DNA of 64,000 nucleotides from Bugula neritina. Its lineage: Eukaryota; Animalia; Bryozoa. The stretch lies in assembly GCA_964035545.1 (NCBI GenBank), contig OZ037766.1, positions 22,494,767 to 22,558,766 on the forward strand, in the 5' to 3' direction. A program made the translations under genes and the position numbers. How positions within the stretch are numbered: position 1 is the first letter of the stretch; each line of letters opens with the position of its first letter. The notes beneath the pieces were generated by a model. It saw nothing but the letters and a program-made list of their open reading frames with translations. It did no database searches and had not been told where the DNA came from. This document shows, piece after piece, positions 50,597 through 59,570 of the stretch.

Positions 50597-53500
50597 TCAG
50601 GCGTAGACTTCTTTGTTAGGTTCTTCGGTGTAGGAATTGACTGGAGGTTTGACTGTTGGGTCAACAGCGTAACTTCCCTCATCTTTCTTCTTCATTCTGT
50701 AGACTATGAACATGACCAGCAGCAGGGTACAGAGTAGCGCCACAACGGCCCCGCCTATCACAGCTAAAATATACAAAATAATAACCAACATCAATTCTCC
50801 TACTCAATCACTGTGTTATGGACTTTTCATTCCATGCTTGGAAACAATTGCATTAAATGAAACTTATACAACCAGAAGCTGATGCAAACCGCAACCACGT
50901 ATCCATCCAAGGATCTATTCGAAGGCAGTGGAAATGTAGTGACTAACAATAAAAATATTGCTTATCCAATGGTATTCATGGTTGAAAAATACAATAGGCC
51001 TACACTACATGATATAATATGAATTACAAACTCTTGATCTCCATTCACGAAATACTACCCACTACTCACAAATCAGTAACATTGCCAATTTCCTACCTAA
51101 CAGGAATTAGTTCTTGTTATTTCCAATGTTGGCAAGTATTTTGCTGTTTACATTGAGTAATTGAATAACTGTATCAAAATGTGTTCACTGAGTTTACTCA
51201 TAGCAGCTGGCTAAAGCCACAATGAAATATAATATTATTTATACATAACAACTCCAGTAAAGAGAGATTTTAGTACCAGCACAGCTAGTTGATGGGAAAC
51301 ATCAAAGAAAGGCTAGTAAAACACAGGAGACAAGATTGAGAGAGACAAAAACTATCAACATAAATATAATAAGTTGTCTTTGAACAGTGTAGAGCAGCTT
51401 GAGTGCTCCGAGTGCTAATTGTTTCTCTGTAGAATACGATTAATTACATCGTGGTACATTTTATTTCTTTGACATATCTAGGACAGAGTAATCATCACCA
51501 GCTAATAGGTATACCAGCAAATCAAGGTCCAGGGTACTTCTGTGTGTAGCTGCAGGTAGCTGTTTGGCTCCCAACATTATCTTTACAGGTATCTAGCAGA
51601 TTCTTTAGAATGTTTCAGTCAAGTGTTCTGTCTATGACTATATGCAGCTGACTTCACAGTCAACAATAGCGATTGACTAATTTCAAATCAATTATTCCAG
51701 CAGGTTTTTGGGAGTAGCTGTGGTCTAGGGGTTAGAGCACTGAGTTCAAGAAGAGGTCACAGTTTCATGCCCAATAAAAGCCATTAGTGATGTTAGGAAA
51801 AGCATCTAGTCATAATTGCTCCTGTGCAAACTCATGAATAAGTCCTTAGCCAATTTAAAAAACCCTTTCTATCAGGAATTCCCACAGGGACTATTCCACT
51901 AGTCTCTCTGAGTAACATCAACTCTTAGAAAATAATGGCCTAGTGGTGGCAAATAAACTGTAAAAACCAAGTGGCAGCCACAAATTGATTCCTAATCCAA
52001 CCACTCAGCTGGTAAGCCTCTGTTAATAGTAATTTAATTATTGTGTAACATTTAGCCTAGCCCTTACAGTGTGGAGTCAGAAGAGGTAGTAATTATACAA
52101 TCTACATTGGTAACAGGTGGGGGGGAGGGGGGCTGCAACCCATCCCACTGCCTATGCTACATGCAGTTGTAGAGTTTTAGTTGCAGAGCCAAAATTACAG
52201 ATGCACCAGCCCATGGTAGTTAATAGTGTGACTGATGATGACTACCTGGGCTTGGTGGTGGATGAATGCCTACCTGCAAGGATGCCTGGATGAGATAACA
52301 TGGACAGCAGGCTGTGTTTGCCGACTCTGTTGACAGGTTCTCTGAACACACCATCGTGATCCACTCCTTCTCTGGGCTGGTTGAAGTTGAATGTCTCTTT
52401 TCCTCCTGAAGGCGTGTTTCCTCTTTCAGGTTTCTCTACAACAGTCATGATGGTTTGTCACTCCACAACTAGATTCCTATCTACTGATGCTCACACAGGG
52501 GCAAACGCAGGGCAATCTGCAACTGCGACCATACCTTTGTTGGCAACCCATCAACAACGCTAGCACCTGTATGCTAGAATTGTGCAGTGTGATGCATATT
52601 TTTCCAGCAGCTACAGTGGTGAGAAGTTGAGAAAAGTTTTACCAAACATATTTTAATAATTATAGATGCTGATCAACTGACATGCTGTGTAATTTGTGAC
52701 GCCCAAGGTTGCTTAAGCAGCACCTCATCACAATTATTAGGTTAGAGTAAACTATCACATGACATTACAGGTCACTAGGCCTGGAAGGTGCAACCAGGAG
52801 AATATATATGCCTGATTTATCATCCATGGTGCAAGTGAATCACACCAACTACTGCGGATACCATTTGATGCTGCTCAATCATGTGACCTTTTGACTTTTC
52901 TATATGAGTAAGTTGATAGCTTTGTGCAAGTGATAACCTCTTCCCCTAACAGATATAAGCTGTCAACTTCAACCACTGATTCAATTATTCAAATGAATGA
53001 ATTTATGGGTGGGAGAATTTTAATCTCTGATTATTAATACAGCACCAAGTTGTCAGAGAGAGAGAGAGATGCTAGTAGTCAAGATAGGACTACTCTCCTG
53101 ACATCTCCAACCAGCCTTGTGGATAGAGAAGATGTTAGATGTGAGGTCAGGATGCAGACATCTTAACTCACCATGGTGGATTGGTGGTCGTTTGGTTCTA
53201 CTGTTAGTCACCACGTGTGGAGGTGAGCTGCGAGTGAATAAAGCAGTAGGAGTAAAGGGGGTAGAAGATCTAGTGACTGGTGTACTGCTGCGTGGTGTGT
53301 TAGGTCTGTTGGTACTGGACAAAAGCTTACCTGCAATTAGAAAACAAATGTCAGTAGACAGGCAGATCATGGTACCCATGGCAACTCACAAGCTCAAATC
53401 AACAATGCTACTCACAATTTTATATTCAAGTACAATGGAAAGTTGATATCTTAACTTTCCTGAGACATTACTTGGACCAAAATTGCACAACATACTATCT

Positions 53501-56500
53501 GTTGGTGTATACATTGCATAAAATGAATTAAGTATAGCTGATAGTCTGTTGGGTTGATATCACTACTTACTAGAATAACTAGACGAAGTAAATATAAACA
53601 ATATGCCCAACTACTGTACACAGGGCTAAAACAGTGTAAACATATTTCAATGAGCACTCGTGCAGGTGTGAGATGTAGTGCAATAGCCCATTCATTTCAT
53701 CAAACACTTTCAACTCATGCAGCTATTCTTTTTACCAAAATCAATTACTCAAGTTTCTGTTAGCAATAACAGAGTTTAGGCAAATAGCTGATAATTGGCA
53801 AGTAATGCAATACTTCTACTCGTCAGCTGCCTGTTTTCAATTACTAGTAATAAATTAAACAACATTGCTTCAAACCTAGCAATGTAATAAAAGGGTTGGT
53901 GCAGTGGGCTCTCCCTACTCAGTTAGTACAGTTTGTCCTTCAGCTAACAATCCTTTGCGGTGAAACTTAGACATAATACTCATTACAGAGTTGACTTCAA
54001 ACAAGGCTTGCGGCAGCATTGGCCAGCTCTATGATAGCTGCTTTATGTATTACACTCATCTATCAAAAGCATCAAGGCAATAGCTCCTAGTAAAGTTTAA
54101 TGGGGTACCATACGACATCATCTATTTCGACATCTGAGTGGATGGGGTTTAAATCAATTTTATAATTAAAAACACATACTTGAGAAGAGATAGGGGTAAA
54201 CTCTAAGCTGTGGTGATTATATTTTTATTCACAACTTCCAATGTTTTAGGGTTGCCGACCAGCAGAGGCTAAATTAAAATATAAATTCCTGTCACTGATC
54301 TACAGTGCCAGTACAGTTGAAAAACATGTTGACACTGCGAACAACCTGCTGTCAGTCATCAACCATGTCCACTCCCTGTCCTTGAGCTGTCAGCCACCAA
54401 AGTATCTAGTTTTCAGCACTTTCATTATACCACACCTCCTAACAATACACCAACAATACAAGTCACTTACCAACGCCTCCCAGCAGGTGCAGGCTCTTCT
54501 CTACAAGGTCGCAATCATATGGGAAGGAGTCACTGACAACTGAGAGGTGTGTAAGAGTAGAGGCAATCACTCGACCCAGCTTGTCCACACACCAGCAGGA
54601 TAGACCTCCTTCATCACAAACCTTGAGCTCCGAGGTATCACCACTACCTTCCAGTACGATGTCAACATCTGCAGTCACACAGTTAACTTCTTACCATCAT
54701 AATTATTTATATTAAAATTTAATAGACAGGAGTATGAATTGACTGACTAAAAGGCATCTATTTGTGATGATGACAGACTAGAGTCTAGACTCTAGAGTGA
54801 AGGCAGGTGGGCTAGGTGCACAGCAAGCTGGTGGTTTATACATGATATAGAATGTACATCACTCAGAATAGAGAGCATTCATTCCTTATGGCTGCTGGCT
54901 GTGGAATCAGGTGAACATGGCTCTCATCTCATATGAATGATTCATGAATACACTATCTAGTATCTGCACAGACTTGTTAATATTGAGAACTCAAATGCAA
55001 TGATTACATGAAAACTTGACAGACAAATATGATACAATGGCAAAGATGCAATACATACATACAAAGAGGCTTCTAGTGTAAACAGTGGTTGGTGAAAAAA
55101 CAACAGCCCAACTGAAAAAATCAAATTTAATACATAGTGCAATTAGATAAAGTAACAAAATAATGTATGGGCCACAGATTAAGCACAACATATATTACAT
55201 ACCAGGTCAATATAGCTGAAAATCAACAAAGAAGGTGATGATACATAAGTAGGCCTCAGCTGCTATACTATAAAACTCTGGTCTGTATTGTAGGCTGTAT
55301 TACCCTAAGCCAGGCATACAGGGTGTGTCCAGGAGAAAGATGAATGAAAAGAGAATTGGCACATTACGCGCAACATAATGCAATACCTTATTTCTTATAT
55401 TGAATTTTGATTTCTCCGTCTAAAAGTCCAAACTTTAGTGTGGGGCTTTTCTGCCGATATTGAAATCACGAAGGATTGAGGTTTGAGAATAGATAACTAC
55501 CACCTCCACAAAATGTTACACAACTCAAAACTGGGAAAGAAAGGGAGATGGGTGACCCGAAGGTAACAATGAGAAAGGAATAGTAGAGAGGAGGTGAGAA
55601 AGTTGAGAGAAATGCTCATAAAAAGACTCTTAGAATAAAATGTGCGTTGATGCAAACCTACCTCCACTGCCGCTACCTGAAAGAGCAATATCTTCATCAT
55701 CAGGAAATGAAAACCTAGAGAGGTATTGAGTTGTAGACTTAACAGTGGTGGCGGTGGTGGTAGTGGTGGTAGCAGTGTCACCTGAGGAGGCAACGAAGAC
55801 AGAGTCTTCGTCGTCTGGCAGCATCCCAGAGCCGGAAAACGCCAGTCCAGAATACTGAGCCTAAAAGTAGAGTCTGCCGAGTGAGCTGGTAGAATGTGAC
55901 ATCTAGACACTGAAGAGTGGTGGGCAGTACAAACTGGACTAATGTGTGCAATAGTGATGCTGAAACTCAAATCAGATGTGTATTCAATTTTTTTCTTTTT
56001 ATTATTAAACAATAGAATAAATATAGTATGTTACTCTTGCATCAATAAAATGCTAACAGTGACCTGGCAAGTTGAATACACAGAGTTCAGTAAGCAATGT
56101 GGCACCAGAACTGACACTTAGCTATAAGATGAACAGCTAACCACAAGAATCTGAATAAATTCATATAAATCTGCACTTTTCATTGACATTTATCACCTCA
56201 GTTAACTCGACCCACTAGACCACTGGCTGTGGCTGCGCTATGAAAAGAGTAGACCCACATGAACTAAATTAAGGTGGCAAGTAAAATGTAACTGGCAGTG
56301 GAAACACACTATATGATGTGACATGATGGTATTGTAGCTACTAGTGGTTAACAAGATGGTGATATGTTTGTTTATTGGTACTCCCAGCTTATCTAGGTGC
56401 TAGGAGCTCTGTACCTTTTGCTGTTGTACAGTTCATTAGAACAAAACCCATAAAAATAAAATGCCCAAATCAGCATAAAACTAGTGCATAACTGAGATAG

Positions 56501-59500: not shown

Positions 59501-59570
59501 CCTGAGAATAAAATACCACGCACAAAATAACTAATCCTTCGCATAGGAACATTTTTTGTAATAGTTCCAT
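50597..59570 (-). CDS. Sdc: Syndecan (transmembrane heparan/chondroitin sulfate proteoglycan core protein), 6 exons, ~317 aa
   Basis: Exons: 59570-59502 (signal peptide MELLQKMFLCEGLVILCVVFYSQ, accATGg context); 55860-55662 (SGSG/DDED GAG sites, Thr tract); 54668-54471; 53330-53172; 52435-52274; 50763-50597 (TM VIGGAVVALL...IVYRMKKKDEGSY...KEVYA). Phases are consistent. C1 motif RMKKKDEGSY is diagnostic. Confidence 0.93.
51712..51895 (+). mobile_element. tRNA-Thr-derived SINE copy (diverged) in last syndecan intron
   Basis: gtggtctaggggttagagc head and gtgatgttaggaaaagcatctagtcataattgctcc body. Confidence 0.75.

What the first reader, a model, noticed from the sequence alone, without database searches (positions are those of the whole stretch)
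54471..54668. Syndecan ectodomain contains a thyroglobulin type-1-like disulfide module
Seen: a symmetric phase 1-1 exon of 198 nt encodes EGSGDTSELKVCDEGGLSCWCVDKLGRVIASTL...FPYDC, in frame between GAG-site and stalk exons. Established: C-x5/6-CWCVD-x2-G...C is the C-terminal subdomain of thyroglobulin type-1 repeats (testicans, nidogen, IGFBPs, thyropin cathepsin inhibitors), and syndecan ectodomains are normally unstructured and Cys-poor. Only four Cys are present, so the first disulfide pair is missing. Inference: exon shuffling gave this syndecan a folded module, possibly for protease inhibition or ligand binding. I know of no described example.
Basis: partly seen in the sequence, partly recalled or inferred. 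Interest (0 to 1): 0.8.

Follow-up and report, generated by a model that had tools for sequence, protein, structure and literature searches.

The report
Half thyroglobulin-type-1 module in bryozoan syndecan
The exon is real and is spliced into a bryozoan (Bugula-type) syndecan mRNA, but it is not a new invention: it is the shortened remnant of a complete thyroglobulin type-1 domain that syndecans of molluscs, annelids, nemerteans, brachiopods and bryozoans carry and that databases already annotate.

Summary
Observation confirmed. Window 54471-54668 (minus strand) is a 198-nt phase 1-1 exon with canonical AG/GT borders. It is exon 3 of a six-exon syndecan gene (Pfam Syndecan 74 bits on the last exon). 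It encodes four Cys in a C-x6-CWCVD-x2-G...C pattern. This matches only the C-terminal half of Pfam Thyroglobulin_1 (20.1 bits, cut-off 20.6).

PF00086+PF01034 is precomputed for more than 100 database proteins, and every named one is lophotrochozoan. Those outside Bryozoa have complete six-Cys domains. In Lingula the whole domain lies on one phase 1-1 exon at the same gene position.

All bryozoan genes seen keep only the four-Cys half, preceded by an acidic Ser-Gly site. These are this gene, a second syndecan gene in the same genome and Watersipora; an unnamed transcript of unknown taxon shows the same half.

So the domain was gained in an old lophotrochozoan ancestor and shortened inside the exon in bryozoans. 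Cathepsin inhibition is unlikely because the L1 loop subdomain is missing.

No paper in the searchable library describes TY-syndecans. Interest is moderate.

The parts
59502..59552 (-). Exon 1, coding part: signal peptide. It ends at a phase-0 donor CAG|GTAAGT. An in-frame upstream ATG at 59570 is possible.
   Evidence: tblastn of P0002 and P0036; mRNA contig alignment; sequence context.
55662..55860 (-). Exon 2: distal GAG-attachment exon. It has acidic-flanked SGSG sites and a poly-Thr run. It ends with 1 base of a codon (phase 1).
54471..54668 (-). Exon 3, the finding: a 198-nt phase 1-1 exon. It encodes an acidic EGSGD Ser-Gly site followed by a four-Cys half thyroglobulin type-1 module.
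   Evidence: RNA-type contigs cover 54466-54670 at the depth of the neighbouring exons. Spliced contigs L003 and L004 are 97.1% identical here.
54511..54618 (-). Core of the module, from Cys17 to Cys52. These Cys are equivalent to Cys3-Cys6 of a TY repeat. Predicted disulfides are 17-24 and 26-52.
   Evidence: All four Cys and Gly31 fall in invariant columns of an 83-sequence alignment of syndecan TY modules. Regex scan. Sequential TY disulfide connectivity is from PMC10889554.
53172..53330 (-). Exon 4: Ser/Thr/Pro-rich stalk, phase 1-1. It is the fastest-evolving exon (76% nt identity to the sister lineage, with indels).
   Evidence: Junction to exon 5 seen in RNA-type contigs.
52274..52435 (-). 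Exon 5: juxtamembrane ectodomain exon, phase 1-1.
   Evidence: (joint 52274 to 50763 in four runs).
50600..50763 (-). Exon 6, coding part: transmembrane helix and cytoplasmic C1-V-C2, ending EVYA. The stop codon follows at 50597-50599, and the 3'UTR runs at least to 50402.
   Evidence: Pfam Syndecan 74.1 bits, E 8.8e-21.

Best explanation
The window holds a six-exon syndecan gene of a bugulid bryozoan; its protein is about 90% identical to Bugula neritina KAF6020526.1. Exon 3 is spliced into the mRNA between the distal GAG-attachment exon and the mucin-like stalk exon.

Exon 3 encodes an acidic Ser-Gly site (a probable extra GAG attachment site). This is followed by the second, beta-rich subdomain of a thyroglobulin type-1 (TY) repeat, with two self-contained disulfides (Cys3-Cys4 and Cys5-Cys6 equivalents).

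This is an inherited and reduced domain. A complete six-Cys TY domain on a single phase 1-1 exon was added to the syndecan gene in a lophotrochozoan ancestor. In bryozoans about 28 residues inside that exon were lost: helix alpha1, loop L1 and disulfide D1. TY disulfides pair sequentially, so the deletion left no unpaired Cys and the remaining half could stay folded.

Inferred function: a small, rigid, disulfide-locked protein-binding knob in an otherwise disordered proteoglycan ectodomain, placed next to a GAG chain. The partner is unknown. It is probably not a classical three-loop cathepsin inhibitor.
For: Shown:
- Exon borders, phase and Cys pattern.
- Syndecan domain on the last exon.
- Transcript contigs L003 and L004 from two runs align to the window in six collinear blocks that end at the predicted splice sites.
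- Contigs of RNA-type runs cover exon 3 at the same depth as exons 5 and 6 (117 vs 92; 944 vs 815-913), with no intron coverage. They break exactly where exon and intron paths share AG and GTAAG.
- P0002 and P0036 (Bugula neritina 'Syndecan') contain the module in the same place.
- PF00086+PF01034 occurs in molluscs, annelids, nemerteans, the brachiopod Lingula and the bryozoan Watersipora. An ESM Atlas cluster of 72 members carries both families.
- Full TY domains score 58-61 bits over profile positions 15-67. The four-Cys modules score 20-29 bits, over positions 38-63 in this exon, the paralogue exon and Watersipora, and over 19-65 in the unnamed P0041.
- Only bryozoan-type sequences have the four-Cys form.
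- In Lingula the whole TY domain is one phase 1-1 exon between the GAG and stalk exons. The Watersipora half-module is on one exon at the same position.
- A second syndecan gene in this genome has its own four-Cys phase 1-1 exon, 24.5 bits.
- The four Cys and one Gly are invariant in 83 aligned modules.
- Exon 3 has the lowest dN of the ectodomain exons: 0.021, against 0.033-0.087.
- The AlphaFold2 model has three strands and a helix, with core pLDDT 72-82. The top Foldseek and VIA hits are all TY proteins.
Against: - The window exon falls just under Pfam's cut-off (20.1 vs 20.6 bits).
- The conserved Gln before Cys3 is Val here.
- The Cys5-Cys6 loop is longer than usual.
- Mean pLDDT of the model is only 69, and the structural matches are weak (Foldseek E 0.66; VIA Z 3.1).
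- The dN/dS figure rests on only 6 substitutions.
- The RNA evidence comes from a sister lineage (95-99% identical), not from the sequenced individual.
- Exon skipping would keep the frame and could not be tested.
- No experiment bears on folding, GAG attachment or binding.
- Absence of TY-syndecans outside Lophotrochozoa rests on the best 120 rows of two searches and on silence in the literature.
Confidence: 0.78

Rival explanations
1. The half-module is a decaying relic of the ancestral TY domain. It now serves only as a spacer and has no specific fold-dependent function.
For: - Half of the domain is gone.
- The Pfam score is below the cut-off.
- Gln is replaced by Val and the last loop is lengthened.
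- AlphaFold2 confidence is moderate and the fold matches are weak.
Against: - All four Cys and the Gly are kept in this gene, its paralogue, Watersipora and P0041.
- Exon 3 is the best conserved ectodomain exon at both the nucleotide and protein level.
- An odd or decaying Cys count would be expected in a relic.
Confidence: 0.15
2. The module is a thyropin: it inhibits papain-like cysteine cathepsins at the cell surface.
For: - TY domains of p41, saxiphilin, testican-1, EpCAM and tick IrThy inhibit cathepsins, and GAGs modulate IrThy (PMC10889554; PMC8114703 listed).
- Loops L2 and L3 lie in the retained subdomain.
- A GAG site adjoins the module.
Against: - The reactive edge is built from three loops, L1-L3. 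L1, helix alpha1 and disulfide D1 belong to the first subdomain, which is deleted here.
- Many TY domains do not inhibit cathepsins.
Confidence: 0.07
3. A recent exon-shuffling event gave this one syndecan a new module.
For: The symmetric phase 1-1 exon is typical of mobile extracellular modules.
Against: - The orthologous exon, at the same position and phase, is present in Watersipora and Lingula.
- The architecture is present in five phyla.
- Both paralogues in this genome carry it.
Confidence: 0.02
4. The exon is a prediction artefact and is not part of syndecan mRNA.
For: None beyond the lack of RNA from the very same individual.
Against: Intron-free contigs from two runs contain it in place. 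Its depth equals that of the neighbouring exons.
Confidence: 0.01

Closest known systems
Lophotrochozoan TY-syndecans, e.g. Lingula anatina 'syndecan-4' P0224, Owenia P0152, Lottia LOTGIDRAFT_235646, Capitella CAPTEDRAFT_227529, Watersipora 'syndecan-2-like' P0043
   Same: Same gene family, same order of parts (signal peptide, GAG sites, TY, stalk, TM, C1-V-C2), and the TY part on one phase 1-1 exon at the same position.
   Different: Non-bryozoan members have one complete six-Cys TY domain, or two in molluscs, scoring 58-61 bits. This gene keeps only the four-Cys second subdomain, preceded by a Ser-Gly site.
Thyropins: p41 invariant-chain fragment (1ICF), saxiphilin TY domains, tick IrThy
   Same: CWCV core, beta-sheet second subdomain, Cys3-Cys4 and Cys5-Cys6 disulfides. 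They are the top structural hits.
   Different: This module lacks the first subdomain (alpha1, L1, D1) that forms one third of the inhibitory wedge. It is membrane-anchored on a proteoglycan. No activity is known.
Testican/SPOCK and SMOC (secreted TY-containing proteoglycans or HSPG partners)
   Same: They combine a TY domain with GAG biology. Testican carries GAG chains and a TY domain (structure rows; PMC10464977, PMC5360445 listed).
   Different: They are secreted, have Kazal and SPARC Ca-binding domains, and have no syndecan TM or cytoplasmic domain. They are not homologous outside the TY domain.
Vertebrate, arthropod and nematode syndecans
   Same: Same TM and cytoplasmic domain and same GAG-site logic.
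   Different: No TY motif in the ectodomain: 101 of the 221 syndecan-like proteins fetched have none. Reviews treat invertebrate ectodomains as lacking recognisable modules (PMC8061687, PMC1464127).

Membership tests
Syndecan (PF01034) | Conserved transmembrane plus cytoplasmic C1-V-C2 domain scoring above Pfam's gathering score. | tested here: met
   74.1 bits against a cut-off of 25.2 on window:50600-50803:-. The C1 motif RMKKKDEGSY is present. C2 is EVYA rather than EFYA.
Syndecan (PF01034) | Type I topology with an N-terminal signal peptide and acidic-flanked Ser-Gly GAG attachment sites in the ectodomain. | tested here: met
   A hydrophobic exon 1 peptide matches the N-terminus of P0002. 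SGSG sites flanked by D/E lie in exons 2 and 3. Actual GAG substitution cannot be tested here.
Thyroglobulin type-1 repeat (PF00086) | Score at or above Pfam's gathering score. | tested here: not met
   20.1 bits against 20.6 for the window exon, matching profile positions 38-61 only. The paralogue exon scores 24.5, Watersipora 28.7 and P0041 22.5, which are above the cut-off; the first two match only the C-terminal half (38-63), P0041 positions 19-65.
Thyroglobulin type-1 repeat (PF00086) | Six Cys forming three sequential disulfides (subtype 1A), with two subdomains. | tested here: not met
   Only four Cys, aligned to Cys3-Cys6. Cys1, Cys2 and the helix/L1 region are absent.
Thyroglobulin type-1 repeat (PF00086) | Core motif (Q)C...CWCV-x2-3-G...C. 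| tested here: met
   VC-x6-CWCVD-x2-G-x20-C. The Cys and Gly fall in invariant columns of 83 syndecan TY modules; Gln is replaced by Val.
Thyroglobulin type-1 repeat (PF00086) | Descent from a bona fide TY domain (orthologous exon). | tested here: met
   Same exon rank and phase 1-1 as the complete TY exon of Lingula (L002:36750-36977) and the half-module exon of Watersipora (L001:16193-16375).
Thyroglobulin type-1 repeat (PF00086) | TY fold of the second subdomain. | tested here: inconclusive
   The AlphaFold2 model has three strands and a helix, pLDDT 69. The best structural hits are thyroglobulin, saxiphilin, p41 and TROP2, but only at E 0.66 and Z 3.1.
Thyropin (MEROPS I31 cysteine-protease inhibitors) | Tripartite wedge of loops L1, L2 and L3. 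| tested here: not met
   The L1-bearing first subdomain is deleted. The loop definition is from PMC10889554.
Thyropin (MEROPS I31 cysteine-protease inhibitors) | Measured inhibition of papain-like cathepsins. | not testable with these tools
   Needs recombinant protein and enzyme assays.

The most novel reading that the evidence does not exclude
The second subdomain of a TY repeat can exist as an autonomous, disulfide-locked mini-domain. Bryozoan syndecans have kept it next to a GAG attachment site through a gene duplication and across cheilostome lineages. More broadly, TY-syndecans are a lophotrochozoan-wide class of syndecan with a folded ectodomain module that the syndecan literature has overlooked. 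That module may couple heparan sulfate to control of extracellular cysteine cathepsins or to a specific protein ligand.
Probability: 0.3. Interest if true: 0.6.

Novelty: new variant of a known kind. Interest (0 to 1): 0.4.

Why it matters
Syndecan ectodomains are generally presented as disordered GAG carriers with no folded modules. An entire superphylum carries a folded TY domain in that position. In bryozoans it has been cut down to half, yet it is conserved.

This gives a natural experiment on two questions:
- What the smallest stable unit of the TY fold is.

The claim in the finding itself, a unique newly shuffled module, does not hold. The architecture is already annotated automatically in many database entries.

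Tried and rejected
- **Full-library search with the exon.** A HMMER search with the 65-residue exon gave only the two Bugula-type clusters plus multi-repeat TY proteins. A single short module is too weak to pull out distant syndecans, so I switched to full-length database proteins.
- **Relic of the lost half.** I looked for a relic of the missing N-terminal TY half in the intron between exons 2 and 3, using open-frame listings and a regex scan. Nothing was found. The Lingula and Watersipora gene structures show the loss was inside the exon, not loss of an exon.
- **Structure searches.** Foldseek and VIA on the 65-residue model gave only weak scores. I use them as consistent evidence, not as decisive evidence.
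- **Direct junction evidence from read laying.** The contigs end at the exon borders, and exons 2 and 4 of the sister lineage fall below the 95% threshold. The junctions were instead shown by the intron-free contigs L003 and L004.
- **tRNA or SINE test.** ARAGORN on the highly covered element in intron 5 found nothing.
- **Literature.** Five paper searches for syndecan plus TY and two syndecan evolution or review papers contain no description of the architecture.
- Exons were searched one by one by reference, and database protein P0002 stood in for the full-length product.

Full report
**What is at the coordinates**

- Read on the minus strand, 54668-54471 is 198 nt, preceded by CTGCAG and followed by GTAAGT.
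- Two bases finish a split codon, 65 whole codons follow and one base is left, so the exon is phase 1-1.
- The peptide begins with an acidic Ser-Gly site (EGSGD). It then has Cys at residues 17, 24, 26 and 52 around a CWCVD-x2-G motif.
- Pfam Thyroglobulin_1 matches residues 17-40 to profile positions 38-61 of 67. The score is 20.1 bits (E 4.4e-4), just under the 20.6 gathering score.
- phmmer against PDB sequences finds thyroglobulin repeats and saxiphilin.
- A loose regular expression for the TY C-terminal half occurs once in the six-frame translation of the window. It occurs 0.01 times per shuffled window.

**The gene**

Open frames on the minus strand and tblastn with the database protein P0002 define six coding exons. 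Splice-site inspection fixes the borders.

| Exon | Window coordinates | Content |
|---|---|---|
| 1 | 59552-59502 | Signal peptide; phase-0 donor |
| 2 | 55860-55662 | Acidic SGSG sites and a poly-Thr run |
| 3 | 54668-54471 | The finding |
| 4 | 53330-53172 | Ser/Thr/Pro-rich stalk |
| 5 | 52435-52274 | Juxtamembrane ectodomain |
| 6 | 50763-50600 | TM helix, C1 RMKKKDEGSY, C2 EVYA |

- Introns 2 to 5 are all phase 1.
- The last exon scores 74.1 bits for Pfam Syndecan.
- The closest named protein is KAF6020526.1 of Bugula neritina, which UniRef calls Syndecan.
- Identity to the window ranges from 72% to 100% by exon. I infer that the window comes from a member or close relative of the Bugula neritina complex.
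Exons were searched by reference one at a time, and P0002 served as the full-length stand-in.

**Is the exon spliced in?**

- One reads call was allowed, on 5,901 bases. All four runs are kept as contigs and are 95-99% identical to the window, so they come from a sister lineage.
- They show the joint 52274>50763 in four runs and the stalk>52436 joint in two.
- They cover 54466-54670 at a depth like the neighbouring exons: 117 vs 92 in X2, and 944 vs 815-913 in X3. The introns have no coverage.
- The contigs end exactly where the spliced and unspliced paths stop sharing letters. These are AG at the 5' side and GTAAG at the 3' side, both shared with the ends of exons 2 and 4.
- The decisive evidence is two Logan contigs of 1,319 and 1,255 nt from two runs (L003, L004). 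They encode P0002 without introns.
- These contigs align to the window in six collinear blocks whose ends are the predicted splice sites.
- Exon 3 is the best conserved block (97.1% nt identity). Exon 2 is 87.5%, exon 4 is 76%, exon 5 is 94.5% and exon 6 plus UTR is 95.6%.
- An exon-by-exon Nei-Gojobori count gives dN 0.021 for exon 3. The other ectodomain exons give 0.033-0.087 and the TM/cytoplasmic exon gives 0. The counts are small: 3 synonymous and 3 non-synonymous changes.

**Is it unique?** No.

- A word-indexed search with P0002, and a profile search with 15 TY-bearing syndecans, list well over 100 proteins whose precomputed Pfam domains are PF00086 plus PF01034.
- Every named one is lophotrochozoan:
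  - Gastropods, bivalves, cephalopods and a chiton.
  - Annelids: Owenia, Capitella, Paralvinella, Ridgeia.
  - Nemerteans: Lineus, Tubulanus.
  - The brachiopod Lingula.
  - The bryozoan Watersipora.
- The ESM Atlas holds a 72-member cluster with both families, whereas the nematode and arthropod syndecan clusters carry PF01034 only.
- Of 221 syndecan-like sequences fetched, 120 have the CWC-type motif and 101 have none.

**Complete domains versus the bryozoan half**

- Molluscs have two complete six-Cys repeats. The annelids and Lingula that I examined (Owenia, Lingula) have one.
- Full domains score 58-61 bits over profile positions 15-67.
- Only the bryozoan-type sequences have a four-Cys module that starts after the position of Cys2. 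These are Bugula P0002/P0036/P0037, Watersipora P0043, and the unnamed P0041, whose taxon I could not establish.
- These modules score 20-29 bits, over profile positions 38-63 except P0041, which matches 19-65.
- In an alignment of 83 modules, all four Bugula Cys and Gly31 fall in invariant columns. The nearly invariant Cys2 column is empty in Bugula, and the usual Gln before Cys3 is Val.

**How the half arose**

- In Lingula the whole TY domain lies on one phase 1-1 exon (L002:36750-36977), between the GAG exon and the stalk exon.
- In Watersipora the half-module lies on one exon at the same rank (L001:16193-16375).
- From exon start to Cys3 there are about 45 residues in Lingula, but 16-17 in Bugula and Watersipora.
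- So bryozoans lost about 28 residues inside the exon, not a separate exon. No relic is visible in the upstream intron.
- The window's genome also has a second syndecan gene (G000:C1, last exon 4690207-4690395). It has its own phase 1-1 exon with a four-Cys half-module, 24.5 bits. I infer that the truncation predates this duplication.
- In every bryozoan-type gene the residues before Cys3 include an acidic-flanked Ser-Gly. The deleted subdomain appears to have been replaced by, or to sit beside, a GAG attachment site. This last point is inference.

**Why a half domain can survive**

- The tick thyropin paper (PMC10889554) describes the TY fold as two subdomains.
  - The first holds helix alpha1, loop L1 and disulfide D1.
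  - The second holds the beta1-beta2 sheet with the Trp-Cys-Val core, loops L2 and L3, and disulfides D2 and D3.
- In the p41 pattern the pairs are sequential: 1-2, 3-4, 5-6.
- Deleting the first subdomain therefore leaves two closed disulfides and no free Cys.
- An AlphaFold2 model built on the 83-sequence alignment gives three strands (15-17, 23-27, 33-40) and a helix (52-62). pLDDT is 72-82 in the core and 69 overall.
- Foldseek and VIA-align rank thyroglobulin, saxiphilin, the p41 fragment and TROP2 on top, but weakly: E 0.66; Z 3.1 with rmsd 3.3 A over 49 residues. This is consistent with the TY second subdomain but not proof.

**Function**

- The thyropin reactive edge needs L1, L2 and L3. 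L1 is gone, so classical cathepsin inhibition is unlikely.
- Conservation of the Cys framework in three bryozoan genes and in P0041, together with the low dN, argues against a mere relic.
- I commit to this reading: a small rigid protein-binding knob between the GAG-bearing tip and the mucin-like stalk, possibly working together with the adjacent GAG chain.
- This step is inference. Nothing here tests binding.

**Literature**

- No paper in the searchable library links syndecan to a thyroglobulin type-1 domain.
- The 2006 comparative genomics paper and the 2021 review do not mention it.
- So the architecture is documented in sequence databases by automatic annotation but, as far as I could search, it is not discussed in print.

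**Verdict**

The module is a reduced, inherited TY domain, not a new shuffled acquisition.
- It is a new variant of a known kind.
- Interest is moderate (0.4).

Noticed in passing
G000:C1:4686237-4690395 (+); loci L009:4238-4456 and L005: There is a second syndecan gene in the same genome, with a stronger Pfam Syndecan match (93.2 bits), a canonical EFYA end and its own four-Cys half-TY phase 1-1 exon. Reviews state that invertebrates have a single syndecan. Several molluscs in the hit lists also show two loci.
   Followed up: partly
window 51710-51827 (intron between exons 5 and 6): A short element is covered at very high depth in RNA-type contigs (up to 11,242 in X1), with many different flanking sequences. 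One flank resembles a tRNA T-arm. ARAGORN finds no tRNA here. It is probably an interspersed repeat.
   Followed up: partly
window 50600-50614 (-): The C2 PDZ-binding end is EVYA in this gene and in Bugula neritina P0002/P0036. The paralogue, Watersipora and almost all other syndecans keep EFYA.
   Followed up: no
window 59553-59570 (-): An in-frame ATG 18 nt upstream of the modelled start lies in an ACCATGG context. It would add six residues to the signal peptide.
   Followed up: no
proteins P0083, P0165, P0168, P0194: Some lophotrochozoan syndecans carry further modules besides the two TY repeats (PF22352, or PF07699 in P0194). This suggests repeated domain accretion on the ectodomain.
   Followed up: no
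protein P0001: A 125-residue 'protein' in the metagenome collection is simply this exon read through into the upstream intron on genomic DNA of the host animal. It is an ORF-calling artefact, not a separate gene.
   Followed up: yes
window 55742-55777 (-): The poly-Thr codon repeat in the GAG exon varies in length between the window and the sister lineage. The reads tool skipped it as a repeat.
   Followed up: no
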